From IMG/VR virus record IMGVR_UViG_3300044712_001255, positions 248,001 to 312,000 of that record: 64,000 nucleotides of DNA; one strand, written 5' to 3'. This document shows, piece by piece, positions 8,175-37,938 of the stretch; positions within the stretch are counted from its first letter, which is position 1; each line of letters opens with the position of its first letter. The notes under the pieces are model-generated. The model was given only the letters and a program-made list of their open reading frames with translations, did not search any database and was not told the DNA's origin. The translations under genes and the position numbers were made by a program.

Positions 8175-8393
8175 ATGGAAGATGAAGCGCAACGCAAGAA
8201 GGCGTTAGATGACTTTTTAAGTGTGTTCTCTCAGCAACAACGTGAATTTAAGTTCACTGCGCATGACACAAATGAGACGTTTCGGCCGCCGTTAGCAGGC
8301 GATGGCAATGAATGGCAATTTCAGGCATTTCAGGCATCACCTAAAACAACTGGCGTGGGATATGTGCTGTGGTCTAGAATTCGAAAGCCATGA
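8175..8393 (+). CDS. hypothetical protein
   Basis: 72-aa ORF, ATGA overlap with HNH gene. Confidence 0.45.
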   Translation: MEDEAQRKKALDDFLSVFSQQQREFKFTAHDTNETFRPPLAGDGNEWQFQAFQASPKTTGVGYVLWSRIRKP

Positions 8394-8758
8394 GCAAGAA
8401 AAAGGAGAAACGTGTTCCACGTCCTCGAGGTCGTACGTTGGAACAACTTGCAATTCGAATTGCGCAAACTGATAAAACATTCGACGCATTGCCCGATGGG
8501 TGGAGCGGAAAGTGTATTTTTTGTGGTGGCAGAGTGTTTGTGTCATCATCAGGTAAGACGAACGCTACCATAGAACACATAGTACCAGTTTCTGCGGGTG
8601 GGACAAATGATGAACTCAATGTTGCATTAGCTCATAGCTCTTGCAACTCAGAAAAGGGCGTTCGACACGATCCCAACTACCCAAAAGACCCTCGATCTGT
8701 AGAAGTTGTCAATAACCTGCTCCAAAGACGCCAGGAGAGGTTTCGATCTGATATTTAG
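8390..8758 (+). CDS. HNH endonuclease
   Basis: CIFC...TIEHIVPVSAGG..N.ALAHSSCNSEKG. Confidence 0.75.
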   Translation: MSKKKEKRVPRPRGRTLEQLAIRIAQTDKTFDALPDGWSGKCIFCGGRVFVSSSGKTNATIEHIVPVSAGGTNDELNVALAHSSCNSEKGVRHDPNYPKDPRSVEVVNNLLQRRQERFRSDI

Positions 8759-9592: not shown

Positions 9593-9693
9593 GTGTAAAG
9601 GGTCAAGCGAGGCTATATACTAGAATCAACGCAACAGAAAATGCCACAGCGGTGGAAAATAGTTGTGTACAAGTGAAAGATTAATGATACTGT
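9593..9693 (+). promoter_or_regulatory. tandem promoters upstream of first RNA cluster
   Basis: GTGTAA(9593)-17-TATACT(9616) and GTGTAC(9665)-17-TACTGT(9688). Confidence 0.65.
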
Positions 9694-9742
9694 ATGATTA
9701 CCGAGGCGTTCATACCGCTCGGTCCTACAAATAGGAAATCCA

Positions 9743-9856
9743 ATGAAGACTGCAATCGCAAATATCGCAAAACAATATCGCCAACCAGAATGGCGTATTG
9801 AGGCGAATTATGCGATTCGCAATGCCAATCAGGAGAAGGATAAGATCCCGAGCTAG
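9743..9856 (+). CDS. putative leader peptide (37 aa)
   Basis: AGGAAA SD; MKTAIANIAKQYRQPEWRIEANYAIRNANQEKDKIPS*. Confidence 0.6.
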   Translation: MKTAIANIAKQYRQPEWRIEANYAIRNANQEKDKIPS

Positions 9857-9884
9857 CGTAGTTGAATAAATAAAGTTCAATGCG

Positions 9885-9920
9885 TCGGCTCGGAAGAAGA
9901 TTCCGGGCCGATTGTGTTTT
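9885..9920 (+). terminator. intrinsic terminator / attenuator hairpin before tRNA cluster
   Basis: 11-bp stem TCGGCTCGGAA/TTCCGGGCCGA, loop GAAGA, then TTGTGTTTT. Confidence 0.7.
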
Positions 9921-9925
9921 AGAAT

Positions 9926-10009
9926 GGTGCGTTGCCCGAATGGTTCAAGGGGCGAGGCTGTAGTCCTCGCGGTTAAGACCGATTGGTGGTTCGAATCCAT
10001 CACGCATCA
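9926..10009 (+). tRNA. tRNA-Tyr(GTA)
   Basis: Cloverleaf, CGAGG-CTGTAGT-CCTCG, long variable arm. Confidence 0.9.
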
Positions 10010-10055
10010 CCGGAACTAACGAGTTCTGATGTTCTCTGAAAACTGATCGTTGTAT

Positions 10056-10141
10056 GGATGTGTTGAGCAGGTGGTGAGCTCAGCTGACTGTAAATCAGCC
10101 GCCCGTAACGGGTTTGTCAGGTTCGATTCCTACCGCATCCA
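10056..10141 (+). tRNA. tRNA-Tyr(GTA)
   Basis: GCTGA-CTGTAAA-TCAGC, long variable arm. Confidence 0.9.
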
Positions 10142-10148
10142 CTCATAT

Positions 10149-10231
10149 TCTCGGGTCGGGAAATTGGTATCCCAAGAGATTGTTAATCTCTCGCACGTAA
10201 GTGTATGTAGGTTCGAGCCCTACTCCGAGAG
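10149..10231 (+). tRNA. tRNA-Asn(GTT) with long variable arm
   Basis: AGAGA-TTGTTAA-TCTCT, G73, variable region CGCACGTAAGTGTAT. Confidence 0.85.
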
Positions 10232-10232
10232 C

Positions 10233-10320
10233 GAACTCATAATGCAAGTGCCTGCGTGGAGCAGGAATACTGCAAGTGAAAGGAAGATTAACATACCAAG
10301 TAACACCAAACAGTGGGTTC
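10233..10320 (+). ncRNA. structured RNA with internal GTGAA...AGTAAC helix
   Basis: Closing GAACTC/GGGTTC, hairpin CCTGC/GCAGG, GTGAA 10276 and AGTAAC 10299. Confidence 0.45.
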
Positions 10321-10324
10321 ACAT

Positions 10325-10397
10325 TGCGTAGTAGGCAAATTGGTAAGCCGTGGAGTTGTTACCTCCTTGATTGCGGGTTCGAATCCTGCCTGCGCAG
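10325..10397 (+). tRNA. tRNA-Asn(GTT)
   Basis: TGGAG-TTGTTAC-CTCCT, G73. Confidence 0.85.
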
Positions 10398-10399
10398 CG

Positions 10400-10582
10400 C
10401 CGGATAGTGGTGGGTTCCACTGCGTAAGTGAATGAAGTAACTATGCTAATGCGACGCTTGGGTTCGAGTCCCAACAGGTAACAAATGGGCATAATGGTAA
10501 CGGTTACTGGTTACGCAAAACAAGTTGACTACGAGGGCAAATGTTAGCGTAATCTACTGGGTTCGATTCCCGATAGTCCGCA
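10400..10582 (+). ncRNA. structured RNA with two T-arm-like hairpins
   Basis: GGTTCGAGTCC and GGTTCGATTCC hairpins, GTAAC-TATGC/GCATA-GTTAC and TTACGC/GCGTAA helices; no cloverleaf. Confidence 0.45.
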
Positions 10583-10595
10583 AATCACAATGAAT

Positions 10596-10666
10596 GCCTC
10601 ACTAACATAATGGTAGTGTAACTGGTTCTTACCCAGCTAGTCTCAGTTCGATTCTGGGGTGTGGCA
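10596..10666 (+). tRNA. tRNA-Lys(CTT)
   Basis: ACTGG-TTCTTAC-CCAGC. Confidence 0.85.
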
Positions 10667-10667
10667 C

Positions 10668-10738
10668 TGCGGCGTAGTTCAATGGTAAAACAGCTCGCTC
10701 TGACCGAGTATCTGTAGGTTCAACTCCTACCGCCGCAA
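10668..10738 (+). tRNA. tRNA-Gln(CTG)
   Basis: GCTCG-CTCTGAC-CGAGT. Confidence 0.9.
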
Positions 10739-10741
10739 CGA

Positions 10742-10916
10742 GCCGACAATTCCAGTTTCGAGTACTGGACGCACTTGATAACATTGGCGCTTGAAAGGGC
10801 CCATTCACATTGTCTCGAGCACCAGTGTGATGGGCAGCAAGTACGTAAAACGCCTCACGACATCGTAGAAATAGCAATGAAAACAAAGTGTGTAATGCAA
10901 GTGGTAGCATATCGGC
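10742..10916 (+). ncRNA. circularly permuted tRNA-like RNA, copy 1
   Basis: 3' half 10742-10777 (GCCGA, T arm, CGCACTT-G) precedes 5' half 10886-10916 (AAGTGTG, D arm ATGC/GCAT, TCGGC); all four stems pair. Confidence 0.75.
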
Positions 10917-10924
10917 GTGTTTTT

Positions 10925-10995
10925 TGGAGCATCATCTAATGGCAGGATAGTAGCCTTTGAAGCTATGAATAGGGGTTCGAGTCCCTTTGCTCCAA
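10925..10995 (+). tRNA. tRNA-Gln(TTG)
   Basis: GTAGC-CTTTGAA-GCTAT. Confidence 0.9.
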
Positions 10996-10998
10996 CAA

Positions 10999-11151
10999 GC
11001 CCGAGACCTGGGTTCGAGTCCCAGTTGGACGGTGGCGCTTGAGAGCAAGTCAACGTGCTGATCACACGGAGACATCGCTAGTACGTAAGTCGCCGGCAAT
11101 TGGCTGATCACCTTTTGTCTTGTCCAGTAGTTTAGCGGTCAGAACACGGGC
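10999..11151 (+). ncRNA. circularly permuted tRNA-like RNA, copy 2 (Asp-like scaffold)
   Basis: 3' half 10999-11032 (GCCCG, T arm, TTGGACG-G) precedes 5' half 11121-11151 (TGTCCAG, D arm GTTT/GAAC, CGGGC). Confidence 0.8.
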
Positions 11152-11164
11152 AGTCCTTTCACAT

Positions 11165-11237
11165 GCACTAGTAACTCAATCGGTAGAGTAGACGGCCTTT
11201 AACCGTAAAGTTGAGAGTTCGAGCCTCTCCTGGTGCA
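11165..11237 (+). tRNA. tRNA-Lys(TTT), C33 variant
   Basis: Loop CCTTTAA. Confidence 0.8.
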
Positions 11238-11252
11238 CTTCAACAACGATTT

Positions 11253-11324
11253 GCTTCTGTACGCATCGGGTGAGGCGGGTGGATTGTCAATCCATTGAGG
11301 CGGGTTCGAGTCCCGTCAGAAGCG
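11253..11324 (+). tRNA. tRNA-Asp(GTC)
   Basis: GTGGA-TTGTCAA-TCCAT, G73. Confidence 0.9.
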
Positions 11325-11330
11325 CAATAC

Positions 11331-11403
11331 GTCCCTATAGCTCAACGGATAGAGCGCTTGGCTACGAACCAAGAGGTTGTAAGTTCGAATCTTGCTAGGG
11401 ACG
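11331..11403 (+). tRNA. tRNA-Arg(ACG)
   Basis: CTTGG-CTACGAA-CCAAG. Confidence 0.92.
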
Positions 11404-11404
11404 C

Positions 11405-11478
11405 TGCGGGTTAGAGAAGAGGCCCATCTCACTTGGCTCATAACCAAGAGACCGCCGGTTCGAATCCGGCATCCGCTA
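11405..11478 (+). tRNA. tRNA-Met(CAT), initiator-like
   Basis: CTCATAA loop, 1:72 mismatch; only two G-C pairs at base of anticodon stem. Confidence 0.8.
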
Positions 11479-11479
11479 C

Positions 11480-11554
11480 GACGCTGTAGCTCAAATGCAA
11501 GAGCAGCTGCAATTAAGCAGCAAGATGTTGGTTAAAATCCAGCTGGCGTCACCA
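11480..11554 (+). ncRNA. tRNA-shaped RNA with 6-nt non-canonical anticodon loop and encoded CCA
   Basis: Intact acceptor, D and T stems; GCTGC-AATTAA-GCAGC; ends ACCA. Confidence 0.65.
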
Positions 11555-11555
11555 T

Positions 11556-11631
11556 GGCCTTGTCGTCTATGAATGTAGGACGCCACCCCTTAGTCGAGGT
11601 GGAAAAACAGGTGCGAATACTGTCGAGGCCG
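11556..11631 (+). ncRNA. Glu-like tRNA scaffold with 10-nt anticodon loop
   Basis: GGCCTTG/CGAGGCC acceptor; CCACC-CCTTAGTCGA-GGTGG; degenerate T loop. Confidence 0.55.
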
Positions 11632-11637
11632 CAAATT

Positions 11638-11710
11638 GATTCTGTCGTCTATGAGTAAGACAATCCCAAATTGGTGGGAATAAAAGCTGATTCGTTGTCA
11701 GCCTGGATCA
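11638..11710 (+). ncRNA. tRNA-shaped RNA with non-canonical anticodon loop
   Basis: GTCT/AGAC D stem; TCCCA-AATTGG-TGGGA; GCTGA/TCAGC T stem. Confidence 0.55.
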
Positions 11711-11711
11711 C

Positions 11712-11785
11712 TGGCACATGATGTAGTGGTTTCTGCATGCTGGTCTGATAAATCAGTCGTACGAGTCCGATTCTCGTTGTGCCTA
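11712..11785 (+). tRNA. tRNA-Ile(GAT)
   Basis: CTGGT-CTGATAA-ATCAG; slightly atypical T loop. Confidence 0.75.
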
Positions 11786-11786
11786 C

Positions 11787-11858
11787 GGCCTTGTCGTCTA
11801 TCGGTAGGACAATTGGTTCTCAGCTAATAAAGGACGGGTTCGACTCCCTCCAAGGCTA
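11787..11858 (+). tRNA. tRNA-Glu(CTC)
   Basis: ATTGG-TTCTCAG-CTAAT. Confidence 0.85.
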
Positions 11859-11860
11859 CA

Positions 11861-11967
11861 CTCTTTTGCATTGTGGTCGTGTCTCGACGGGGACCAGCGA
11901 TAGGTTCAAATCCTATCATAAAATTTGGTAGCTGAGCGTTGGTTCGAATCCAACGGGTGTAAAAGAG
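11861..11967 (+). ncRNA. closed RNA with two tandem T arms
   Basis: 10-bp closing stem CTCTTTTGCA/TGTAAAAGAG; ATAGG-TTCAAAT-CCTAT and GTTGG-TTCGAAT-CCAAC. Confidence 0.6.
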
Positions 11968-11973
11968 ATTTTT

Positions 11974-12047
11974 GGTCCCATCTTCTAAATGGTCAGGATA
12001 CTAGACTTTCAATCTGGTAATGGCGAGTTCAAGTCTCCCTGGGATCA
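11974..12047 (+). tRNA. tRNA-Glu(TTC)
   Basis: CTAGA-CTTTCAA-TCTGG. Confidence 0.9.
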
Positions 12048-12133
12048 CCTCGAGTTTCCTTCATGAACTTTGTCGTGCCTGCGTGCGTGGAAAGCGACTA
12101 GATCACCTGGTGACAATCGGGAAAGACCGATAA

Positions 12134-12207
12134 CGGGGTGTACCTCAGTCTGGTAGAGGGCTTGTTTTGGGTACAAGACGTCGCACGTTCGATTCGTGTC
12201 ACCCCGA
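12134..12207 (+). tRNA. tRNA-Pro(TGG)
   Basis: CTTGT-TTTGGGT-ACAAG, C1-G72, A73. Confidence 0.9.
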
Positions 12208-12221
12208 CAACGAAAGATTAC

Positions 12222-12293
12222 ATGCCACTGGTGTTAATGGTAACATGTGGGTTTCCAAGTCCCGTGATGCGCGTTCGATTCGTGCGTGGCATG
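12222..12293 (+). tRNA. tRNA-Trp(CCA) (Gly TCC register less consistent)
   Basis: TGGGT-TTCCAAG-TCCCG, G73. Confidence 0.65.
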
Positions 12294-12360
12294 CTAAACA
12301 AAAATGTGTGATACAAGCTCACACATTAGGAATACAACATACAAACGCAAGGAAAAAGTC

Positions 12361-12876
12361 ATGAATATCAGCCAAGCTCTTCGTCGTATCTCAGTCATTA
12401 AGGGTCAGCTCGCAACCACAGCAACACGTTTCGCCAGTTCAGTCACGTGGATTGATGACGCAAAGCCAACATATTCGCTTGCTGAGTGCGATGTTGCGTG
12501 GGCTCGTCTCGTAGGTGAGCAGACGTCGCTTGAGGCCGCAGTGGCAATTGCCAATGCAACGAACAAGATCACCTATCGTGGTCAGGAATTCACGCTTGCG
12601 TTTGCCGTGAAGCAGTTGGCTGTTTTCAAGGCAAAGATTGCGCTCTTGCGAACCCTGAATTGTCAGGCGACTGCAGAACGCACCGATGTTACTCGTGATA
12701 CTGAGTACGTAAATGGAAATTACGTAACTGTCACTCGAGAGAAGAAGGTTCACTGTGCATTCACTGAGCGTGAGCGTGATACGAGTGTTCAGGTAGCGCA
12801 GACAGACTTTGACGAGCTCAACGCACTCGTCGAGGCGGCAAATCACACCATTCAGGTCGACCCTCAGGTCGTCTGA
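12361..12876 (+). CDS. helical/coiled-coil protein, DIP1984-like
   Basis: MNISQALRRISVIKGQL...IANATN...ELNALVEAAN resembles DIP1984-family pattern (recalled, not searched). Confidence 0.55.
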   Translation: MNISQALRRISVIKGQLATTATRFASSVTWIDDAKPTYSLAECDVAWARLVGEQTSLEAAVAIANATNKITYRGQEFTLAFAVKQLAVFKAKIALLRTLNCQATAERTDVTRDTEYVNGNYVTVTREKKVHCAFTERERDTSVQVAQTDFDELNALVEAANHTIQVDPQVV

Positions 12877-12883
12877 TGTGAGA

Positions 12884-13081
12884 TGCGCCGAAAGGGAAGT
12901 TGCTGTTGAAACCCTGTTGATTTAAAATCAACTCAACCCTAATAAGGAATGAAAGCTATTGGTATCGGTTCTGGCATCGCATTCAGCACTCAGCGTCCAG
13001 CATCTTTTCCTATCAGCTCATAGCCCTTAGCAGGTAGATTTCAGCAATCAGCAGTCAATTACAACACGCTTCCCTTGCGTT
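12884..13081 (+). ncRNA. structured RNA with 7-nt-period YAGC repeats
   Basis: Closing AAGGGAAGT/GCTTCCCTT; YAGC at 12984,12991,12998,13014,13021,13028,13042,13049. Confidence 0.6.
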
Positions 13082-13085
13082 GTAT

Positions 13086-13157
13086 GCGGTGATAGTTTAG
13101 TGACAAAACGGCAGGCAACCAAAGCCTGAGATCATGGGTTTGATTCCCACATCCGCG
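13086..13157 (+). pseudogene. degenerate Trp-like tRNA (loop AACCAAA)
   Basis: CAGGC/GCCTG stem, no U33, mismatched acceptor. Confidence 0.45.
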
Positions 13158-13269
13158 CTAAGTAACGAGAAAAATTATCGGGTGAAATACCCATATGCCT
13201 GATTGCGTAAGAAGGGTCGACACTTCTGCGATGGAGGTACAACGCCAGAGGAGCGTTAACGTGAAAGTT
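13157..13269 (+). ncRNA. AGUA/GAA-helix RNA
   Basis: AGTA-ACG (13161) ... CGT-GAA (13261), internal hairpins. Confidence 0.5.
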
Positions 13270-13270
13270 T

Positions 13271-13341
13271 GGGGCTTTCGTATAGCGGGATTACGCTGGC
13301 TTTGCAAGCCAGTCACACGGGTTCGAGTCCCGTAGGCTCCA
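13271..13341 (+). tRNA. tRNA-Ala(TGC)
   Basis: CTGGC-TTTGCAA-GCCAG, G3:U70. Confidence 0.92.
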
Positions 13342-13374
13342 CAAATCAACAATGACTGCGTTCAAAGTTGATCA

Positions 13375-13500
13375 ATTACGAGTAACTATTAAGCGGTGTA
13401 AATCCGCATTGTATGCAACGTCATCGACAGTTCGCCTCGATCGGGGTGACTGCCCTCTGCACGTTGACGTACTGGCCGGTGAGCCTAATGTGAAAGTAGT
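13375..13500 (+). ncRNA. AGUA/GAA-helix RNA
   Basis: ATTAC-G-AGTA-AC ... GT-GAA-A-GTAGT; GCGG-TGTAAAT-CCGC hairpin. Confidence 0.55.
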
Positions 13501-13505
13501 GTCAT

Positions 13506-13577
13506 GGGCCTGTAGTTTAATAGGGAAAATTCCTGCCTCGCACGCAGAAAACTCGGGTTCGAATCCCGATGGGTCCA
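13506..13577 (+). tRNA. tRNA-Ala(CGC)
   Basis: CCTGC-CTCGCAC-GCAGA, G3:U70. Confidence 0.88.
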
Positions 13578-13589
13578 CACAATCAACGA

Positions 13590-14630
13590 TCAGTTTGATA
13601 AGAGGTGCCTAAGAACGTCATTGTATGATTCAACCTTGACGTTTGACAATGCATTAAAGATTTCATCTTGCGTTGCCTTGTCTTTCACGTTCTGCTTGAT
13701 CCAATCAATCACTTGGTCCTTATTTACGCCGCCTTGCGTTTGTGATTGTGTACGTGAGCTGCTGTTGGTTTGTTGATTAGGTTGCTGTTCAGTAGACTCT
13801 TCATTAGACCGTTGTGATACTTGCGTATCAAAATTTTGGATCTCTTTGCCCACAGCTTGCATTTTTTCGATCATCGCTGCTAATTTGCCGCTTTTCACTA
13901 TTTGCGCAATTTCTCTTGCTATATTTGCATCAACGTTCATGCCAGCTTGCTTACCAGCTGACATTACAATTGATTGCAACGTATTACTTCCGTGTTGATC
14001 GCCTCGTGGCAATTCACTGCCGCCTGGTACCTTACCAGCATCTAGCGATGTTGCCTGCTTTGTTGGCCTTTGTGCTGTGATTTGTGGTTGTGGTTTTGGC
14101 TTTGGCGTCGCAGGTACAGGTTTCTTTCCAAACTTTGCATTTGCAAGTTCTTCATCTGATTGCACGCCACGTTCTTGTTCGTCTACTGCTTCCATTAGAC
14201 GACGAAACTTTGTGTGAAATGACTCATTGATTTCAGCAGCATCAACTTTTTGTGCAACAAGCTCGTAAAAATGCATACATTTCATGAACTCTTTTTCAAG
14301 AAGCTTGAAATCGCCGTCCTCGTCGTCAAAAATGTCCTTGGAAATACGACCTAAAAATCCTTTTATCTTATCAATGGTGCTTTTCTTATTAACTTGCTTG
14401 TACTTTGCGAATTTCCCTTTTATGTTATCAAGCGTTGTTGCAAGTTGATTTGCGATCGTTATTTGATCATTAGCTTTTAGTACGTCCACTGTTTGCTTCA
14501 CATTTTTGAAAAGCGCTTTGAATTTTGCAAATAACTCTTTATCGATTGCTTCATTCAATTGCTGACGAATGTTCTCATCGATCTTCAAAAGCTTTCGACG
14601 TTGCGCAAGCGTAAGTTTGCTGGTAGACAT
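13590..14630 (-). CDS. charged protein with Gln-rich linker (putative virion internal protein)
   Basis: IRQQLNEA and FRRLMEA motifs; ATAGTTA 10 nt upstream. Confidence 0.6.
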   Translation of the reverse strand: MSTSKLTLAQRRKLLKIDENIRQQLNEAIDKELFAKFKALFKNVKQTVDVLKANDQITIANQLATTLDNIKGKFAKYKQVNKKSTIDKIKGFLGRISKDIFDDEDGDFKLLEKEFMKCMHFYELVAQKVDAAEINESFHTKFRRLMEAVDEQERGVQSDEELANAKFGKKPVPATPKPKPQPQITAQRPTKQATSLDAGKVPGGSELPRGDQHGSNTLQSIVMSAGKQAGMNVDANIAREIAQIVKSGKLAAMIEKMQAVGKEIQNFDTQVSQRSNEESTEQQPNQQTNSSSRTQSQTQGGVNKDQVIDWIKQNVKDKATQDEIFNALSNVKVESYNDVLRHLLSN

Positions 14631-19538: not shown

Positions 19539-21179
19539 ATGGCTAAGAAGACTGCTAAGAATGTTGCTCCGGTTCAGATGTCTGAGGCTGACGCAGCGAA
19601 ACTGCGTGAGGCTGCGGCTCGATTCGATCTCAACGTTCACATCATCAATTTCCTCAGCTCTAACGCATTCTATGCTGAGATCTCTCGTCGAGTTCACAAG
19701 ATCAGCACGAAGGACATTCCCACCGCTGCTGTGGCTTGGAACCAGAAGCTCGACAACATCGTGTTGTACTACAACCCGGAATTCATGTGCCAGCACACCC
19801 CAAAGCAGGTGATTGGCATTCTGAAGCACGAATTCAGTCACTTGTTCTACGGACACTTGAACGCTCGTCGGAAGACTCCACACCGTATGTGGAACATCGC
19901 TACCGATCTTGCAATCAATTCGCTGATTGTTTCGAGCGAGCAGAATTCTGCTTCATATTCTAACATCAACAATCCTCAGGCTGTTTTGCCGGAATGCGCA
20001 TTGATTCCCGGCCACCCGGTTTTCTTTGCAGATCTCAAGCGGCCCTTGACGGCTGATGAGAAGGCTGCGCAGCCCATCGCTGCTCTTATCGAGAAGATGA
20101 AGCCGTTGCTCGCTTCTGAGGATTATTTCCAGCAGCTGATGAAGGTCGCAAAGGAACAGCAGAACACTTGCCCGATGTGTGGCGGTTCTGGCAAGATCAA
20201 GGTGAAGTCTGACGCGGGTGGAGATGAGAATAGCTCAGACGGGCGGGACGGCGTCGAGAAGGAAGGCCAGGACAAGGGCGAAAATGACAAGGGTAATGGG
20301 TCATCTCGCGGAGATGATTCTCACGACGAGGGATGCGAGGGCGATGGAAATTGTTCTTGTGGCCACGGCGATAACGAGCCCGGTGGTTGTAGTGGTCCTG
20401 ATGGTGAATATGATTGCCCTTGCTGCAAGGGCGATGGTGAGCTCGGTGACGGCATTGGTTCGATGGACGATCATGGATTTTGGGATGACATCCCGGAAGA
20501 TATGCGTGAATACGTCGAAAATCGTGTGCGTAACGTGATTGAGCGCGCTGTTGAATCCGCCGATCAGAGCTCGAATGGCTGGGGCTATATGCCTGCTTCG
20601 ATTCGTGAGGAGATTCGTCGGTTCGTATCCAAGAAGGTGCCGTGGCGCTCTGTACTCCGGCAGTTCATTGGAGTGCTTCTGCCAGGCGATCGTTCTACCA
20701 GCATCAAGCGCATCAATCGTCGCTATCCGTATATCCATCCCGGTGTGAAGCGTGGTCGCAAGGCTAAGCTTCTCGTCGCAATCGATATGTCTGGTTCTGT
20801 TGGAGAGGAACTTCTCGCAACGTTCTTTGCGGAACTAACCAACTTGGCAAAGAATTGTGAGATCGATGTTGTCCCGTTCGATTGCTCTGCTGAACCTGAA
20901 CATATCGTCAAGTGGCGACGTGGTGGTCCCCCTCCGATGGGTCGGGTGAAGGCCGGTGGTACCAGCTTTGATGCTCCCACTGACCTTGCCAATGATCCTA
21001 AGAACCGCGGTCGTTGGGATGGTCTGCTAATCGTCACAGACGGGATTTGCAACGCTCCCAAGGAAAGTCGGGTACGTCGCGGATGGGTTCTTGGTCCTGG
21101 GTGCAAGCTGCAATTCGACTCGAACGAGCTCCAGGTCTTCGTAGACAATGAGCGACCGATGGTCGGAGCGTGGAGGTGA
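19539..21179 (+). CDS. metallopeptidase-like plus vWA domain protein (DUF2201-type)
   Basis: HEFSH, NIATDLAIN, vWA DMSGS...GGT...IVTDG; promoter GTGCAG(19476)-17-TAGAGT. Confidence 0.8.
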   Translation: MAKKTAKNVAPVQMSEADAAKLREAAARFDLNVHIINFLSSNAFYAEISRRVHKISTKDIPTAAVAWNQKLDNIVLYYNPEFMCQHTPKQVIGILKHEFSHLFYGHLNARRKTPHRMWNIATDLAINSLIVSSEQNSASYSNINNPQAVLPECALIPGHPVFFADLKRPLTADEKAAQPIAALIEKMKPLLASEDYFQQLMKVAKEQQNTCPMCGGSGKIKVKSDAGGDENSSDGRDGVEKEGQDKGENDKGNGSSRGDDSHDEGCEGDGNCSCGHGDNEPGGCSGPDGEYDCPCCKGDGELGDGIGSMDDHGFWDDIPEDMREYVENRVRNVIERAVESADQSSNGWGYMPASIREEIRRFVSKKVPWRSVLRQFIGVLLPGDRSTSIKRINRRYPYIHPGVKRGRKAKLLVAIDMSGSVGEELLATFFAELTNLAKNCEIDVVPFDCSAEPEHIVKWRRGGPPPMGRVKAGGTSFDAPTDLANDPKNRGRWDGLLIVTDGICNAPKESRVRRGWVLGPGCKLQFDSNELQVFVDNERPMVGAWR

Positions 21180-23869: not shown

Positions 23870-24466
23870 TTGATAGAATTGATCGATATGAAGAAATGTG
23901 ATGCATCTCTTGAAGAGATTCAAAGATTCGTAAAAGAATCAACATGTATTTCGCAAGTTGTCATTGCGCTCAAATTACCGTGTAATGCGAAGTACGCAGA
24001 ATTTGTTCGTCAATTGATCTCACAACACGCACTTGACACATCTCACTTCACACGCAAACGAAAATATGAACGAATCAGAAAAGCTTGTCCTGTTTGTCAA
24101 ACAACGTTTGAAACATACGTAAATCATCCTAAATACAACAAAACAACGTGTTCGTGTGCTTGCGCAAATTCATTCTTTCGTAGTGGAAATAACAACCCAA
24201 ACACAAAGCATGACGAAGATAAGGGAACGTGGATGTACACGTTATGTTGGAAAAATCATGAACATCAATGCGTCATTTGTGGTGAACAAAACATCGTAGC
24301 TGTTCACCATTTTAATGGTAAACATGATGACAATCGACCAGAGAATTTGGTACCTATGTGTCCAACACATCATCAATATTGGCACTCTAAATTTCGATCA
24401 CTCATAGAGGAAAAAGTAAACACATATGTAGAAAATTGGATCTCAACACATCAGAGATTAGTGTAG
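23870..24466 (+). CDS. HNH endonuclease
   Basis: CPVC, CSCAC, CVIC..AVHH.N..H.DN..NLVPMCPTHH; stop lies inside downstream tRNA. Confidence 0.7.
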   Translation: MIELIDMKKCDASLEEIQRFVKESTCISQVVIALKLPCNAKYAEFVRQLISQHALDTSHFTRKRKYERIRKACPVCQTTFETYVNHPKYNKTTCSCACANSFFRSGNNNPNTKHDEDKGTWMYTLCWKNHEHQCVICGEQNIVAVHHFNGKHDDNRPENLVPMCPTHHQYWHSKFRSLIEEKVNTYVENWISTHQRLV

Positions 24467-27014: not shown

Positions 27015-27557
27015 ATGGCAAATCAATATTCTAAGTTTAAATGGGAAGATGAACGTCCATTTGAAGATCTGGGCCGAGTAAAACAACGTAACTTCCTAAT
27101 AAAAGAAGCGAATTTTAGTTGTTCTGCTTGCGGCTTCAATAAGTCAAGAGAAGACGGACGATCAATTTTAGAAATTCATCACATCGATGGGAATCATCAA
27201 AATAATGTTCGATCAAATTTGAAAGTGTTATGTCCAAATTGCCATGCCATGACGTTAAAATTCAGATTTTACGGAAAATCACATCTATCGTCAAAAGATC
27301 ATAGAGCTCGAACTATCAATAAAGAGCTCAGAATAAAACGTAAATTAGCGAGAGAACAACGCCAATCAAAAATTAGAGATCAGTTTTGTGAAACGATATT
27401 GTTATGTCATGAGACAAAAGAAATTGATTTCTCTAAATTTGGATGGGTATTACGTCTATCTGAGATGTTTGGCGTAACGCACCAAGCAATTGGTAGACGT
27501 ATAAGAAAATTGATGCCAGAATTCTACAATGATCATTGCTTCAAAAGGAAAGCATAA
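27015..27557 (+). CDS. HNH endonuclease
   Basis: CSAC...LEIHHIDGNHQNN..NLKVLCPNCH. Confidence 0.78.
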   Translation: MANQYSKFKWEDERPFEDLGRVKQRNFLIKEANFSCSACGFNKSREDGRSILEIHHIDGNHQNNVRSNLKVLCPNCHAMTLKFRFYGKSHLSSKDHRARTINKELRIKRKLAREQRQSKIRDQFCETILLCHETKEIDFSKFGWVLRLSEMFGVTHQAIGRRIRKLMPEFYNDHCFKRKA

Positions 27558-27724: not shown

Positions 27725-28042
27725 ATGATAGCACAAAAAGCACGGTTGATGACTAAACTAGTCTCTCTATTGAGAAAGAAGTTGTTTGATAATTCACCTT
27801 TCATTGAAGAGGTGCTCACTCAACTCGACATATTGACTCTCGAGAGAGGCATCAAAGTATGCGTAGAAGATCAGTTGATCGTGGTGTATTTACCAAGCAA
27901 ACCGGGATTCAATCCAATTCCCGTCGCGGCTGGCGTGATGCACCAGGCTGACGTCATTTTTGAATATGAAGCTGGCACGGGACGCATTGTCAAGTGCCTC
28001 AAGCATCGTGAACGTAATCCAGAAGAATTCAATAACGTATGA
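27725..28042 (+). CDS. hypothetical protein
   Basis: 105-aa ORF coupled to next gene. Confidence 0.45.
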   Translation: MIAQKARLMTKLVSLLRKKLFDNSPFIEEVLTQLDILTLERGIKVCVEDQLIVVYLPSKPGFNPIPVAAGVMHQADVIFEYEAGTGRIVKCLKHRERNPEEFNNV

Positions 28043-28443
28043 AAATACTTGTTTGCGGCTCTAGACATTGGGATGACATCGAGACAATTGCGCGTGTGTT
28101 GGAGGGGTTACCCAAATCTGGTGTCACGATAATACATGGGGCGGCTCGAGGGGCTGACATGATAGCCGGAGAGGTGGCCAAGCAGTTTGGATGGAACGTA
28201 CGTGAATACCCGGCGCAGTGGGACAAACACGGTAAAGCTGCTGGACCTCTTAGGAATCAGCTCATGCTTGATCGTGAAAATCTACGAGACAATCCTATTG
28301 AACTGTGCATTGCATTTCATGATGAGTTGCACAAGCAAGAGGGCGGTACTTACGACATGGTGAGACGATCTGCAGCTCTTGGCATACCCGTTAGAAATGT
28401 GAGATCATCAAATGACTCAACAAATAACACGCTTCATCAATGA
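28039..28443 (+). CDS. SLOG-family protein (DUF2493/YspA-like)
   Basis: ILVCGSR, IIHGAARGAD, AAGPLRNQLM, AFH...GGT.DMV. Confidence 0.75.
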   Translation: MKILVCGSRHWDDIETIARVLEGLPKSGVTIIHGAARGADMIAGEVAKQFGWNVREYPAQWDKHGKAAGPLRNQLMLDRENLRDNPIELCIAFHDELHKQEGGTYDMVRRSAALGIPVRNVRSSNDSTNNTLHQ

Positions 28444-28876
28444 GTACGCATTTTTGAGCAGCTTTCATACGTCCACGGTGCGATGGGACGGTAGACTCTG
28501 GAAGTCGGTTGAACACGCGTATCAGGCAGCAAAGACGCTTGATGCCAAACAACGAGACATGATTCAGGCTGCAAAAACTCCTGGCGAAGCAAAGCGGATT
28601 GGGCAAGCTATCACGCTTCGACCTGATTGGGACGACGTAAAGTTGAACATCATGCGTGAATTGATTCATGAAAAGTTTATGAATCCTTTCCTGCGTCACA
28701 GGTTGCTTGAAACGGGTGAAGCAGAGTTGATTGAAATCAACTTTTGGAACGATAAATTTTGGGGCGTCTGTCGCGGTGAAGGAAAAAATCACTTAGGCAG
28801 AATTCTCATGGATGAGCGAGACAGCATACGAGAAGAATTGATCGCAGATAACACCACCGTGGAGGAACTTCGGTAG
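28412..28876 (+). CDS. NADAR family protein (YbiA-like)
   Basis: FLSSF, SVEHAYQAAK, AKRIG, LLETG, DKFWG, GKNHLGRILM. Confidence 0.85.
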   Translation: MTQQITRFINEYAFLSSFHTSTVRWDGRLWKSVEHAYQAAKTLDAKQRDMIQAAKTPGEAKRIGQAITLRPDWDDVKLNIMRELIHEKFMNPFLRHRLLETGEAELIEINFWNDKFWGVCRGEGKNHLGRILMDERDSIREELIADNTTVEELR

Positions 28877-30065: not shown

Positions 30066-30305
30066 ATGGAAAAGAGTAAAAAGCAACAGGATATTGAAGG
30101 CAAGTTGGTGGCGTGGCGTAAGCTTACTCCCGCGGAGCAGCTCGCTGATTTGGACCGTCGCCTCGGTAAGGGCGTTGGCGCCGCAAAGCAGCGCGCTCGC
30201 ATTCAGGCAAAGCTCGATAAGCAGCCCGCCAAGGCTGAGGCGATTGCTACTGACGTTGTCAAGGAGCGTCCTCAGCGCCCGAAGCGGCAGAAGAAGGACA
30301 AGTGA
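30066..30305 (+). CDS. small basic hypothetical protein
   Basis: SD AGGAG; Lys/Arg-rich. Confidence 0.55.
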   Translation: MEKSKKQQDIEGKLVAWRKLTPAEQLADLDRRLGKGVGAAKQRARIQAKLDKQPAKAEAIATDVVKERPQRPKRQKKDK

Positions 30306-36126: not shown

Positions 36127-36625
36127 CAATACACCCCCACTCAAGTGCTTCTTTTGCCAATAACTTTGCGCCATTGATGTGAAAGTTATTGTCATCATAG
36201 AATTCCACTTGACGTAGGCCACGTTGCTTGATCAATTGCGCAATATATCGCGCCTTTCCAGGTGGAATGTCTGCTTTCTCGCCGAGTGCCATGACTTCGC
36301 ATCCCGGCATATTGTGCATATCAAGGAACTCCTTGGGTCCATTGGGAGATCCTCGGGCAGTCATCACCATCACGCCTTCAGGACCCAATCGCTTGTATGC
36401 GTCCTTTGCTATGTCGAGAATCTCATCATTCTCGTGAAATTCGGGCGCAAGCGACTGGAATTGACTCATATCGTATGAGTACTGTGTTTCGTCCATGCGA
36501 TGTTCTCGCCATTGTCGAGAATCTAGCCATTGGACCTCACCAGTGTCGAGGTCAGTTACCTTGATGCGTGCATCAGAGACACACAACGTATCATCAAAGT
36601 CGAAAATGTAAAGCTTGTTTGGCAT
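36104..36625 (-). CDS. HAD-superfamily phosphatase (RNA-repair type)
   Basis: IFDFDDTL, VMTAR, K, FYDD. Confidence 0.72.
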   Translation of the reverse strand: MPNKLYIFDFDDTLCVSDARIKVTDLDTGEVQWLDSRQWREHRMDETQYSYDMSQFQSLAPEFHENDEILDIAKDAYKRLGPEGVMVMTARGSPNGPKEFLDMHNMPGCEVMALGEKADIPPGKARYIAQLIKQRGLRQVEFYDDNNFHINGAKLLAKEALEWGCIVNVHLVR

Positions 36626-36702
36626 CTAGCTTACCTAGCAAATCCTATCCCTCTTATACGCGGTGTACTCGAGCGTCATTGTGTGGTAATGTACCTATAA
36701 AT

Positions 36703-37938
36703 ATGGCACACAATATTCCCATAGTGATCGAATACTTGAAGACCCACTCTCTCCAGGAGCTGGAGGATGAGCATGGCGTCAAAGCTCGTCCTGACGCGGC
36801 GAACACCAAGTTTAGCCTAAATTACGATCAATTGGCTATCAAGGGCGGTGACAAGCTTGCTGAGCAGTGCCGCGGTATGGTTGTTCGTCCAATCAATGTT
36901 GCAACTTCTGGCGCATCATTTGATTGGGAAAAGCTACGTTCTGCACCCGTTGGCGAGTGCGTTGTCCTGTGTCGGCCAATGGATCGATTCTACAATGACG
37001 GTGATTTCTACGCCGCAAAGATAGACTATGATTCTGCCGTCGTGTATGAGAAGCTCGACGGTACTATGATGGCTGCATATTGGGACCCGCTCAAGGCTGC
37101 ATGGCACACCGCAACTCGATCAATTCCTGAGGCTGACCTGCCAATTCGGTTGGGAGACTTGGTGTTGGAAGATACCACGTTCCGTGGTCTGTTCGATCAG
37201 GCATTGGAATACATGATTAATGGTGAACGTGATCCAATGTTTCCAAATGCAATGACGTGGTGGAATCGACTCAACAAGCAATACACCTATGTCTTTGAAC
37301 TGACGAGCCCATTGAATCGTGTAGTTGTGCAGTATGACGAACCACGTATTACTGCGATCGCTTGTCGAGATAACGTATCTGGTCGTGAATGTCTCACTGG
37401 TATGTATCAACTCTGGCCTCGCCCTCGCACGTGGAAGCTCAATGACACTCATGCTATTAAGGCATTGGCGGATTCATTCTCTCCCGCTGAGTTGGAGGGG
37501 TTTGTAGTGTGTGATGTTCATTTCAAACGCGTCAAGATCAAGAATGCTGCATACGTCTTGGCACACCACGCCAAGGATGGCATCGTGTCTTCAAAGCGCA
37601 ATGCGCTTGTCGCAGCATTCAAGGGAATCCTTGATGACGTCATGCCCATGGTCGATCCTGCAACGCGAAAGGCAATGGAGGAACTGCAATTTGCTGTTGG
37701 CAAGTTCATCAAGGAGAGCGAAGCAAAGTACGCAGATTGGGCATCGCAGTGCGAACCCGGTGACAACAAGACGTTTGCGTCCTTTGTGAGCGCAAATCAA
37801 CCCGTGTTGTCGTCAGCGTACTATGCCGTGTTCCGCGGCAAGAGCAAGACCATCGGAGAATACATGACTCAACACATTGGCGAAGGAATGATTGGCGACA
37901 AGGCACTCGACAATATTCTTACCTACTTGAAGGTGTGA
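36703..37938 (+). CDS. T4 Rnl1-like RNA ligase
   Basis: EKLDGT (motif I), HTATR, YVFELTSP, EGFVV, VKIKN; start re-assigned to MAHNIP. Confidence 0.8.
   Translation: MAHNIPIVIEYLKTHSLQELEDEHGVKARPDAANTKFSLNYDQLAIKGGDKLAEQCRGMVVRPINVATSGASFDWEKLRSAPVGECVVLCRPMDRFYNDGDFYAAKIDYDSAVVYEKLDGTMMAAYWDPLKAAWHTATRSIPEADLPIRLGDLVLEDTTFRGLFDQALEYMINGERDPMFPNAMTWWNRLNKQYTYVFELTSPLNRVVVQYDEPRITAIACRDNVSGRECLTGMYQLWPRPRTWKLNDTHAIKALADSFSPAELEGFVVCDVHFKRVKIKNAAYVLAHHAKDGIVSSKRNALVAAFKGILDDVMPMVDPATRKAMEELQFAVGKFIKESEAKYADWASQCEPGDNKTFASFVSANQPVLSSAYYAVFRGKSKTIGEYMTQHIGEGMIGDKALDNILTYLKV

What the first reader, a model, noticed from the sequence alone, without database searches (positions are those of the whole stretch)
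10785..11094. Conserved RNA domain inside both permuted-tRNA linkers
Both linkers contain TGGCG-CTTGA(A/G)AG...AGTACGTAA-NN-CGCC (10785-10854 and 11033-11094): a GGCG/CGCC helix closing conserved purine-rich strands around a variable insert (a 12-bp hairpin in copy 1). Conservation of the linker while tRNA stems covary suggests it is functional (protein-binding site, processing signal or small ribozyme) and replaces the CCA end. I cannot match it to hammerhead, twister, pistol, hatchet or hairpin consensus.
Basis: partly seen in the sequence, partly recalled or inferred. Interest (0 to 1): 0.72.

Follow-up and report, generated by a model that had tools for sequence, protein, structure and literature searches.

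The report
Conserved cap in circular phage tRNA-mimics
A 324-kb soil phage carries two tRNA-like genes written in reverse half-order. Their acceptor stems are closed by an almost identical structured RNA module found nowhere else, and one public RNA data set shows one of them joined end to end into a 182-nt ring that still holds the module.

Summary
Both linkers (10785-10854 and 11033-11094) hold the same blocks, identical at 25 of 26 positions. The paired tRNA stems around them agree at only 15 of 34 positions, yet every stem still pairs.

Both linkers lie in real circularly permuted tRNA-like genes, ptRNA1 (10740-10921) and ptRNA2 (10997-11156). Each is wedged without spacer between ordinary tRNAs of a jumbo phage.

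An estuary metatranscriptome holds a contig that runs through the whole ptRNA1 linker and then joins 10921 back to 10740. This closes a 7-nt anticodon-type loop (GUGUU|GA). The two DNA runs lack this joint.

The module reads best as:
- an 8-bp interrupted helix (GGCG/CGCC, a one-base bulge, CUUG/UAAR);
- an asymmetric loop (AR versus AGUACG);
- a variable hairpin.

Rfam has no matching family. Exact-pattern scans of viral, metagenome and genome collections found no homologue.

Both ptRNAs lack the C that follows the discriminator in 44 of 46 ordinary tRNA genes here, and both break universal tRNA positions.

I therefore think the module is a retained, sequence-specifically recognised cap on an end-less tRNA mimic, not a spacer or a ribozyme (confidence 0.4). 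Its function is untested. There are no comparators beyond two paralogues and one near-identical variant.

The parts
10740..10921 (+). ptRNA1: circularly permuted tRNA-like gene in the order 3' half, linker, 5' half. Its two ends are the ones joined in the RNA contig.
   Evidence: back-joint 10921->10740.
10742..10776 (+). ptRNA1 3' half: anticodon-stem 3' strand GCCGA (10742-46), variable loop, T arm (10752-68, loop TTCGAGT), acceptor 3' strand ACGCACT (10769-75), discriminator T (10776) followed by G, not C.
10785..10854 (+). Linker domain, copy 1. P1a GGCG/CGCC (10786-89 / 10851-54); bulge A10850; P1b CTTG/TAAA (10790-93 / 10846-49, with C.A at the base); loop strands AAAGG (10794-98) and AGCA+AGTACG (10836-45); P2 hairpin 10799-10835 with apical CTCGAG.
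   Evidence: The variant in run X3 has A10849G, which makes C10790-G10849 pair, and C10802T, which turns C-G into U.G in P2.
10855..10886 (+). ptRNA1 linker 3' part: a 32-base A-rich stretch between the domain and the acceptor 5' strand. It shares no block of 9 or more bases with copy 2.
10887..10921 (+). ptRNA1 5' half: acceptor 5' strand AGTGTGT, AA at positions 8-9, D arm with GG, anticodon-stem 5' strand TCGGC (10912-16), five-base tail GTGTT (10917-21). TTT (10922-24) follows and is absent from the joined RNA.
10997..11156 (+). ptRNA2: second permuted tRNA-like gene. Its ends are predicted by analogy (AA + GCCCG ... CGGGC + AGTCC, then TTT). No RNA evidence.
   Evidence: Run X3 has no depth here.
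11033..11094 (+). Linker domain, copy 2. P1a GGCG/CGCC (11034-37 / 11091-94); bulge T11090; P1b CTTG/TAAG (11038-41 / 11086-89); loop strands AG (11042-43) and AGTACG (11080-85); P2 interrupted hairpin 11044-11079 with apical loop CTGATCA.
10668..10739 (+). tRNA-Gln(CTG) plus the C after its discriminator. It abuts the first base of ptRNA1.
10925..10996 (+). tRNA-Gln(TTG) plus the C after its discriminator. It lies between the two ptRNAs and abuts ptRNA2.
11165..11238 (+). tRNA-Lys(TTT), which follows ptRNA2 after TTT and CACAT.
36568..37938 (+). Rnl1-like (T4 RnlA family) RNA ligase gene at the end of the tRNA region. It is a candidate sealing enzyme by inference only.
   Evidence: phrog_562 at E 2.9e-34. 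TIGR02308 scores 57.5 bits and PF09511 25.3 bits, both below their cut-offs.

Best explanation
**What it is.** The two linkers hold one orphan structured RNA module: P1a of 4 bp, a one-base bulge, P1b of 4 bp, an asymmetric loop AR/AGUACG, and a variable hairpin. The module closes the acceptor stem of two circularly permuted, non-canonical tRNA-like RNAs.

**Shown.**
- The genes fold as permuted cloverleaves.
- The module is identical between paralogues whose stems have otherwise been rewritten.
- RNA of ptRNA1 exists with its anticodon-side ends covalently joined into a 7-nt loop while the whole linker is still present.

**Inferred.**
- Processing of the abutting tRNAs frees the ends. The 5' cut falls right after the C that follows the upstream discriminator. 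The 3' end lies five bases past the stem, before UUU.
- The ends are sealed in the anticodon-loop geometry by one of the phage's ATP-dependent RNA ligases, with the T4-type Pnkp healing them if needed.
- The product is an end-less ring shaped like a tRNA. It cannot receive CCA or an amino acid, because the module occupies the acceptor end.
- The module is kept as a sequence-specifically recognised cap: a docking site for a protein or RNA partner and a block to RNase P, 3' trimming and charging. It is not excised as junk.

What the ring does afterwards (decoy or sponge for tRNA-binding or tRNA-cleaving factors) is conjecture.
For: - **Motif.** Two copies only, both in ptRNA linkers. 25 of 26 block positions are identical, against 15 of 34 stem positions with all stems still pairing. 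Two collinear 9-mers arose in 3 of 20,000 shuffles.
- **RNA.** A 208-base contig in RNA run X3 covers 10764-10921 and then 10740-10789. The joint has no shared letters on either side. The joint is absent from DNA runs X1 and X2, and X1's contig is collinear with the window. X3 has no depth on the flanking tRNA-Gln genes or on the rest of the 3.9-kb stretch, so this is not stray phage DNA.
- **Joint geometry.** The joint gives exactly a 7-base loop with U at position 33.
- **Variant.** Both listed differences in the X3 variant keep or improve pairing (C-G to U.G in P2; C.A to C-G in P1b).
- **Retention rather than removal.** The linker is present in the joined RNA. Both ptRNAs lack the C after the discriminator that 44 of 46 ordinary tRNA genes have. 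ptRNA1 has A at position 8, U-A at 53-61, and G at 32 and 37. ptRNA2 would have G at 33.
- **Enzymes.** T4-type Pnkp (HAD_PNKP 161 bits), two PF09414 RNA ligases and an Rnl1-like ligase are present. There is no RtcB, tRNA-intron endonuclease or CCA-adding enzyme.
- **DNA-level signals.** No promoter-like or terminator-like site lies in either linker.
Against: - The RNA evidence is a single assembled contig at depth 2.6 in one small run. It comes from a 98%-identical relative in a different habitat. A de Bruijn contig cannot tell a ring from a head-to-tail repeat.
- Linker presence would also be seen in a short-lived circular intermediate. Mature tRNAs are poorly captured by such libraries.
- A 7-bp acceptor plus T arm is a good RNase P substrate, and M. 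smegmatis YrlA is cut there (PMC4201824).
- The helices P1a and P1b never vary, so they have no covariation support. ptRNA1's own minimum-energy fold pairs GCUUG with CAAGU instead.
- No partner is known, and no homologue was found anywhere.
- ptRNA2 has no RNA evidence. Its predicted loop (AGUCCAA) lacks U33.
- The nuclease that makes the ends is unidentified. The 3' end used lies 3 bases upstream of the RNase P site of the next tRNA.
Confidence: 0.4

Rival explanations
1. Intervening sequence with a processing signal, as in algal permuted tRNA genes. The ring is only an intermediate. RNase P and a 3' endonuclease then cut the linker out, CCA is added, and a working tRNA results (ptRNA1 would read Asn codons with GUU). 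The conserved module positions or times these cuts.
For: The permuted order plus a back-joined RNA that still holds the linker is exactly what the algal pathway's intermediate looks like (pathway from my own knowledge of Soma et al. 2007). The acceptor has 7 bp and an intact T arm, and the leader before the acceptor 5' strand is A-rich and unstructured. RNase P cuts the closed acceptor stem-loop of M. smegmatis YrlA and CCA is added (PMC4201824).
Against: Neither ptRNA has the C after the discriminator that 44 of 46 tRNA genes here have. The distance from discriminator to module is 9 bases in one copy and 1 in the other, which is odd for a ruler-like signal. ptRNA1 has U73 (E. coli tRNA-Asn uses G73; own knowledge), G37 next to U36, G32, A8 and U53-A61. 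ptRNA2 lacks U33. Two ordinary tRNA-Asn(GTT) genes already exist. Linkers of algal permuted tRNAs are not conserved (own knowledge).
Confidence: 0.28
2. The excised linker is the product. The permuted tRNA is a processing cassette whose acceptor stem lets RNase P and a 3' endonuclease cut out a 90-110-nt small RNA. That RNA carries the conserved module and acts on its own.
For: The module is the only strongly conserved part outside universal tRNA positions. tRNA-guided release of neighbouring small RNAs is an established principle (own knowledge: mascRNA, tRNA-snoRNA units, stable RNAs in the T4 tRNA cluster).
Against: D arm and anticodon stem are kept by compensatory changes in both copies, although RNase P and RNase Z do not need them. 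The ends at the anticodon side are precisely sealed, which a mere cassette would not need. The linker parts outside the module are not conserved.
Confidence: 0.12
3. There is no function of its own. The blocks are leftovers of a shared ancestor (the unit tRNA-Gln + ptRNA was duplicated), or the result of patchy gene conversion or of a small inserted element.
For: The unit tRNA-Gln + ptRNA occurs twice in tandem. No homologue was found elsewhere. Only two paralogues are available.
Against: The duplicated tRNA-Gln genes are only 61% identical, and ptRNA stems agree at 15 of 34 positions, so the duplication is old. The blocks are nevertheless 25 of 26 identical. The blocks flank an unrelated insert and are complementary to each other, unlike a conversion tract. 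The variant's changes fall on a wobble-tolerant pair and on the one mismatched pair.
Confidence: 0.12
4. Small self-cleaving or self-ligating ribozyme that makes or seals the ends.
For: The internal loop has a loose likeness to loop B of the hairpin ribozyme (own recollection, not a test). Rings of this size are typical products of hairpin-type ligation.
Against: No ribozyme family of Rfam 15 matches at E<=10. The two cut sites share no sequence with each other. In the tRNA fold they lie at the opposite end from the module. The base after the 5' cut is G in ptRNA1 and A in ptRNA2. The phage has a full protein healing and sealing set.
Confidence: 0.05

Closest known systems
Circularly permuted tRNA genes of the red alga Cyanidioschyzon merolae and some other algae and archaea (Soma et al. 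2007, own knowledge)
   Same: The 3' half lies upstream of the 5' half in one transcript. The halves fold into a cloverleaf. An RNA exists whose anticodon-side ends are joined while the intervening sequence still closes the acceptor stem.
   Different: The host is a bacteriophage. No bulge-helix-bulge can form at the ends, because ordinary tRNAs abut them. There is no splicing endonuclease or RtcB in the phage. The intervening sequence carries a conserved structured module. The tRNA bodies break universal positions and lack this phage's usual 3' C.
YrlA-type bacterial and phage Y RNAs (Rfam RF02553; Chen et al. 2014, PMC4201824)
   Same: Both have a tRNA-like module with the order T arm, closed acceptor stem-loop, D arm, and with the RNA's ends at the anticodon-stem side. 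Both occur in phages. An acceptor of 7 bp can be cut by RNase P.
   Different: There is no Ro60/TROVE gene in the phage, no long Ro-binding stem and no GNCGAAN0-1G motif. The ends are sealed, not extended. The acceptor stem-loop is enlarged to 89-111 nt with its own conserved module. The Rfam model does not match.
Two-piece tmRNA from permuted ssrA genes (own knowledge)
   Same: The gene order of a tRNA-like domain is permuted, with an intervening segment between the acceptor 3' and 5' strands.
   Different: tmRNA keeps a free CCA end, has no D arm or anticodon stem of this kind, and carries a tag reading frame. ARAGORN reports no tmRNA here.
Kink-turn (k-turn) motif (own knowledge of the consensus)
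   Same: GGCG/CGCC followed on one strand by three bases (CUU) and then G-A fits a C helix, a 3-nt bulge and G.A/A.G. The X3 variant reads G-A before CGCC, the consensus. Window ptRNA1 reads A-A, which is known as a rare natural variant.
   Different: ptRNA2 reads G-U before CGCC, which puts U opposite the key G. No regular non-canonical helix follows. The reading excludes the P1b pairing that fits all three sequences.

Membership tests
Circularly permuted tRNA gene | The 3' half (anticodon 3' strand, T arm, acceptor 3' strand) lies upstream of the 5' half (acceptor 5' strand, D arm, anticodon 5' strand) on one strand, and all four stems are complementary. | tested here: met
   Both loci have 7/7 acceptor pairs, 5/5 anticodon-stem pairs, a T arm and a D arm. 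The minimum-energy fold gives the permuted cloverleaf. The scanner found none in 1.09 Mb of control loci.
Circularly permuted tRNA gene | An RNA whose anticodon-side ends are joined (circular intermediate). | tested here: met
   For ptRNA1 only: the joint 10921->10740 occurs in one contig of RNA run X3 and is absent from DNA runs X1 and X2. ptRNA2 was not seen.
Circularly permuted tRNA gene | A bulge-helix-bulge motif at the ends, cut by the tRNA splicing endonuclease. | tested here: not met
   Only 2 bases lie between the upstream tRNA's 3' C and the anticodon-stem strand, and 8-13 unpaired bases follow the other strand, so no 4-bp helix with 3-nt bulges can be drawn. PF01974 is absent from the genome.
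Circularly permuted tRNA gene | The linker is removed to give a mature CCA-ending, chargeable tRNA. | not testable with these tools
   Indirect evidence argues against it: no C after the discriminator and non-canonical universal positions. No small-RNA data are available.
YrlA Y RNA (RF02553) | A match to the family's covariance model. | tested here: not met
   There is no hit on either ptRNA at E<=10. The only weak hit (20.2 bits, gathering score 69) spans two ordinary neighbouring tRNAs at 11295-11356.
YrlA Y RNA (RF02553) | Encoded next to a Ro60 (TROVE) gene, with a GNCGAAN0-1G motif near the 5' end. | tested here: not met
   PF05731 is absent from the 324-kb record. The 5' end is only 2 bases from the stem. 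The feature is as described in PMC4201824.
YrlA Y RNA (RF02553) | The topology T arm, closed acceptor stem-loop, D arm. | tested here: met
   the topology is as described in PMC4201824.
Known self-cleaving ribozymes in Rfam 15 | A match to any Rfam ribozyme family model. | tested here: not met
   cmscan of 10700-11200 at E<=10 and of 9600-13700 at E<=5 gave only tRNA and chance hits.
Permuted (two-piece) tmRNA | A tRNA-like acceptor/T domain with a tag reading frame. | tested here: not met
   ARAGORN reports no tmRNA in the window.
Kink-turn | C helix, 3-nt bulge, tandem G.A / A.G pairs. | tested here: inconclusive
   By inspection and the variant, it fits the X3 variant, is marginal for window ptRNA1 (A.A at the second pair) and fails for ptRNA2 (G opposite U).

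The most novel reading that the evidence does not exclude
A bacteriophage makes covalently closed, tRNA-shaped RNA rings from permuted genes. It does so by a protein route unrelated to the archaeal and eukaryotic splicing machinery: neighbouring-tRNA processing followed by a phage RNA ligase. The conserved module that replaces the CCA end is the docking site through which the ring captures or misleads a host tRNA-binding or tRNA-cleaving factor. That would make the ring a new class of phage counter-defence or takeover RNA.
Probability: 0.2. Interest if true: 0.92.

Novelty: new variant of a known kind. Interest (0 to 1): 0.77.

Why it matters
My searches of the held literature found no report of permuted tRNA genes in bacteriophages. 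The known cases depend on bulge-helix-bulge cutting by the splicing endonuclease, which bacteria and this phage lack.

If the ring is real, this is a second, independent route to circular tRNA-like RNA. It would give a natural role to phage RNA ligase beyond repairing cut tRNAs.

The conserved module is what turns this from a curiosity of gene order into a testable functional RNA. It is short (about 25 fixed bases), has a simple predicted fold and can be mutated, pulled down and probed.

It would also add a member to the small set of tRNA mimics (tmRNA, YrlA, viral tRNA-like structures). It suggests that 'spacers' in large phage tRNA arrays deserve to be read as genes.

Tried and rejected
**Homologue searches, all empty or chance**
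- Exact motif in IMG/VR: none.
- Exact motif in JGI metagenome contigs: 6 hits, all in coding DNA, none followed by CGCC and none with tRNAs nearby.
- Relaxed motif keeping one P1 pair, in IMG/VR: 7 coding-region hits.
- Full motif in one genome per prokaryote species: none.
- Mismatch-tolerant scan of the genome and all fetched loci: only the two copies are credible. The best other hit, in L003/L006, lies inside a gene on the other strand.
- blastn against GenBank phages: only the tRNA-Gln part matches.

**Relatives through proteins**
- Ligase relatives at 47-49% identity have no tRNAs at all in their records.
- The Rnl1-like ligase, the sigma factor and the 190-aa ORF have no close relatives in IMG/VR.
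- The nearest GenBank phage matches at 30% in a baseplate protein.
- A true relative (78% and 61% protein identity) exists in JGI sample 3300071648. Its two contigs stop at either edge of the tRNA array and it is not in IMG/VR.
- More distant relatives of the 171-aa protein sit beside tRNAs or a tmRNA, on contigs too short or without ptRNAs.

**Other attempts**
- A whole-ptRNA covariance model was not built, because MAFFT misaligns the T arms of the two copies.
- A relaxed ptRNA scanner gave only noise.

**Ideas considered and dropped**
- Sarcin-ricin/loop E reading of AGUA with GAA: the flanks do not pair, and copy 2 has GAG.
- UAA/GAN motif: the flanks do not fit.
- Pairing of the P2 apical loop with the 5-base tail: 5 bp in ptRNA1, nothing in ptRNA2.
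- Pairing of CUUGAR with the T-loop UUCGAG: possible in both copies, but it would undo the tRNA elbow and the T-loop sequence is common.
- Ro60-binding motif: does not fit.
- Promoter or terminator in the linker: none.
- A tRNA with tRNA-Gln as an 'intron': the 5' half of ptRNA1 and the 3' half of ptRNA2 are not complementary.
- A literature search for the 9-mer found only primers and siRNAs.

Full report
**Setting.** The window is bases 248001-312000 of a 324,468-base IMG/VR virus record, estimated 86% complete. Near-identical DNA occurs in rhizosphere metagenomes. It is a large tailed phage, with a baseplate wedge protein, glycosyltransferases, a DNA ligase, HNH endonucleases, a sigma factor and peptidyl-tRNA hydrolase PTH2. 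It has no close relative in GenBank phages; the best match is 30% in a baseplate protein. ARAGORN finds 45 tRNA genes and Rfam finds 46, all on the + strand, in several arrays.

**The observation.**
- The combined pattern occurs twice in the genome and nowhere else in it.
- The blocks T-GGCG-CTTGA-R-AG, AGTACGTAA and CGCC are identical at 25 of 26 positions.
- Two collinear exact matches of at least 9 bases between the two linkers arose in 3 of 20,000 dinucleotide-preserving shuffles.
- Between the blocks lie unrelated hairpins: 6+7 pairs in copy 1, 3+3+4 pairs in copy 2.

**The carriers are permuted tRNA-like genes.**
- My scanner asked for a T arm, a fully paired 7-bp acceptor, a D arm and a fully paired 5-bp anticodon stem, in the order 3' half, linker, 5' half. 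It picks out 10740-10921 (ptRNA1) and 10997-11156 (ptRNA2).
- Its few other hits in the genome were neighbouring isoacceptor tRNAs or G-U-rich chance matches. It found nothing in 1.09 Mb of unrelated phage loci.
- Unconstrained folding of either stretch returns the permuted cloverleaf.
- The paired stems of the two genes agree at only 15 of 34 positions, yet all pairs are kept.
- The tRNA-Gln genes that precede each ptRNA are 61% identical. The unit tRNA-Gln + ptRNA was therefore duplicated long ago, and the linker blocks have been held fixed since.
- Each ptRNA is wedged between ordinary tRNAs without spacer. ptRNA1 and ptRNA2 each start right after the upstream tRNA's discriminator plus one C. 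ptRNA1 ends 3 bases (TTT) before tRNA-Gln(TTG). ptRNA2, by analogy, ends 8 bases (TTT CACAT) before tRNA-Lys.

**RNA evidence.** I laid three public runs on 9800-13700.
- The two DNA runs give contigs collinear with the window and no joint.
- The RNA run X3 (an estuary metatranscriptome of 85 million letters) gives one 208-base contig. It covers 10764-10921 and then continues at 10740-10789. This is a back-joint from 10921 to 10740, with no letters shared between the two sides.
- The contig carries the whole linker.
- X3 has no depth on the flanking tRNA-Gln genes or on the rest of the 3.9 kb, apart from a 45-base piece with 6 mismatches on a conserved tRNA. The signal is therefore not stray phage DNA. 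The unprocessed junctions were not abundant enough to break the contig.
- The joint turns TCGGC-GTGTT + GA-GCCGA into a 5-bp stem with a 7-base loop G-U-G-U-U-G-A. That loop has U at position 33 and GUU at the anticodon positions.
- The contig differs from the window at three places, of which two are listed.
- Limits: this is one contig at depth 2.6, from a 98%-identical relative. An assembly cannot tell a ring from a head-to-tail repeat. A second search for RNA runs found only X3 again.

**Shape of the module.**
- In ptRNA2 the minimum-energy fold pairs GGCG with CGCC and, after one bulged base, CUUG with UAAG.
- In ptRNA1 the same register gives GGCG/CGCC, a bulged A, then U-A, U-A, G.U and a C.A mismatch. 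The variant's A10849G turns that mismatch into C-G.
- I therefore read the module as an 8-bp helix with a one-base bulge (P1a, P1b). Next comes an asymmetric internal loop: A-R plus 0-3 bases on the 5' strand, and AGUACG preceded by 0-4 bases on the 3' strand. Last comes a variable hairpin P2.
- This register fits all three sequences, but it has no true covariation. ptRNA1's own best fold prefers GCUUG/CAAGU, which copy 2 cannot form.
- A kink-turn reading (GGCG/CGCC, bulge CUU, G.A, A.G) fits the variant perfectly, ptRNA1 marginally and ptRNA2 not at all.
- Because even the helical bases are invariant while every tRNA stem has been rewritten, the constraint is on sequence, not only on pairing. 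This points to a specific partner.
- Both P2 apical loops hold a 6-base palindrome (CUCGAG and UGAUCA). I note this without a test.

**Is the module known?** It is not. Rfam 15 gives nothing on either linker at E<=10. The only YrlA hit is the expected false match across two neighbouring tRNAs. Exact-pattern scans of IMG/VR, JGI metagenome contigs and one genome per prokaryote species gave no homologue. Every hit lay in coding DNA without the closing CGCC or any tRNA.

**Is the module conserved in relatives?** I could not test this. A relative with 78% and 61% protein identity exists in JGI sample 3300071648. Its tRNA-Trp is already rewritten, so it would be an ideal comparator. Its two contigs stop at both edges of the tRNA array. 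More distant relatives of the neighbouring 171-aa protein also sit among tRNAs or next to a tmRNA. Those contigs are short and hold no ptRNA.

**Removed or retained?**
- In 44 of 46 ordinary tRNA genes the base after the discriminator is C, never CCA. Where two tRNAs abut, that single C is the whole spacer.
- Both ptRNAs break this rule: T then G, and G then T. At a base rate of 2 in 46, the chance that both break it is about 0.002.
- ptRNA1 has A at position 8, U-A at 53-61, and G at 32 and 37. Its discriminator is U.
- ptRNA2's predicted loop AGUCCAA lacks U33.
- Together with the linker's presence in the joined RNA, this favours a retained module on a tRNA mimic over a spacer that is cut out to release a working tRNA.
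- It does not exclude the second reading. The ring could be an intermediate, and a 7-bp acceptor is an RNase P substrate in M. smegmatis YrlA (PMC4201824).

**How the ends might be made and sealed (inference).**
- The 5' end coincides with the place where every tRNA of this phage ends, after the extra C.
- The 3' end lies five bases past the stem and before UUU in ptRNA1, and the same layout exists in ptRNA2.
- The phage lacks RtcB, the tRNA-intron endonuclease, a CCA-adding enzyme and Ro60.
- It has a T4-type polynucleotide kinase-phosphatase (G000 112499-113455), two PF09414 RNA ligases (115179-116045 and 162202-163227) and an Rnl1-like ligase at window 36568-37938.
- T4 Rnl1 seals breaks in tRNA anticodon loops (own knowledge). 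A ptRNA folded as a cloverleaf presents just such a break.
- Which nuclease trims the ends is open.

**Comparison with the known.**
- The gene order and the joined RNA match the permuted tRNA genes of Cyanidioschyzon. The cutting signal, the enzymes, the host and the conserved linker do not.
- The topology (T arm, closed acceptor stem-loop, D arm) is that of YrlA Y RNAs, which also occur in phages. The Ro60 gene, the Ro-binding stem and its motif, and the covariance model all fail.
- I therefore file it as a new variant of the permuted or mimic tRNA kind, carrying an orphan module.

**Verdict.** My best reading is a retained, specifically recognised cap on a circular tRNA mimic (0.4). The main rival is a processing signal in a removable intervening sequence (0.28). 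The strongest new fact is the RNA back-joint. The weakest point is the lack of any independent homologue.

Noticed in passing
window, all tRNA arrays (9926-35308): In 44 of 46 tRNA genes the base after the discriminator is C and is never followed by CA. Where two tRNAs abut (12 cases), that one C is the entire spacer. The base before the tRNA's first base is C or T in 43 of 46. This suggests a uniform 3'-end rule for this phage's tRNAs (ending at C74, completed by the host CCA-adding enzyme).
   Followed up: partly
window 11480-11551: A tRNA seen by Rfam (44.7 bits) but not by ARAGORN. Its anticodon stem GCUGC/GCAGC closes a 6-base loop AAUUAA, not the usual 7-base loop.
   Followed up: partly
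window 13086-13157: A weak tRNA-like element (21.6 bits, below the gathering score). It has a T arm and an anticodon-type hairpin with loop AACCAAA (no U33) and an imperfect acceptor. It may be a decayed or non-canonical tRNA.
   Followed up: partly
window 10399-10595 and 11552-11711: These are two long 'spacers' inside the first tRNA array. The first holds two T-arm-like segments (TTGGG TTCGAGT CCCAA near 10458, and TGGG TTCGATT CCCG near 10558) without a recognisable tRNA around them. Both fold into several hairpins. No Rfam match.
   Followed up: partly
window 10813-10822, 11058-11064, 11103-11111: The apical loops of the two variable hairpins each hold a 6-base palindrome (CTCGAG and TGATCA). 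In ptRNA2 the 9-mer GCTGATCAC occurs a second time in the linker's 3' part, so loop and tail could pair over 6 bases, or two molecules could kiss.
   Followed up: no
G000 112499-113455, 115179-116045, 162202-163227; window 36568-37938: The phage has a full RNA healing and sealing set: a T4-type Pnkp (kinase plus HAD_PNKP phosphatase), two PF09414 RNA ligases and an Rnl1-like ligase. RtcB and a CCA-adding enzyme are absent.
   Followed up: yes
G000 135456-136310: A metallo-beta-lactamase-fold protein scores above the cut-off for the anti-Pycsar family Apyc1 (83 bits). It also gives weak matches to RNase Z models.
   Followed up: partly
window 12361-12876 (171-aa product); L101, L105, L106, L107, L108, L109: The protein encoded just after the first tRNA array belongs to a family of about 260 representatives of roughly 170 aa (weak DUF6847). 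In the contigs I could read, it again lies directly after tRNA genes, or after a phage tmRNA gene (tag GSNQYFAAAAA). This may be a tRNA-linked function.
   Followed up: partly
window 28039-28876, 32571-32957, 30302-31363: Between the tRNA arrays lie genes for a YspA-type SLOG domain protein, a NADAR domain protein, peptidyl-tRNA hydrolase PTH2 and a SPASM-domain protein. Several HNH endonucleases are there too (19539-21179, 23870-24466, 27015-27557, 35312-35632, 8390-8758).
   Followed up: no
window 10149-10232: ARAGORN calls a tRNA-Asn(GTT) of 84 bases, 10 bases longer than the 74-base tRNA-Asn(GTT) at 10325-10398. The extra length was not examined.
   Followed up: no
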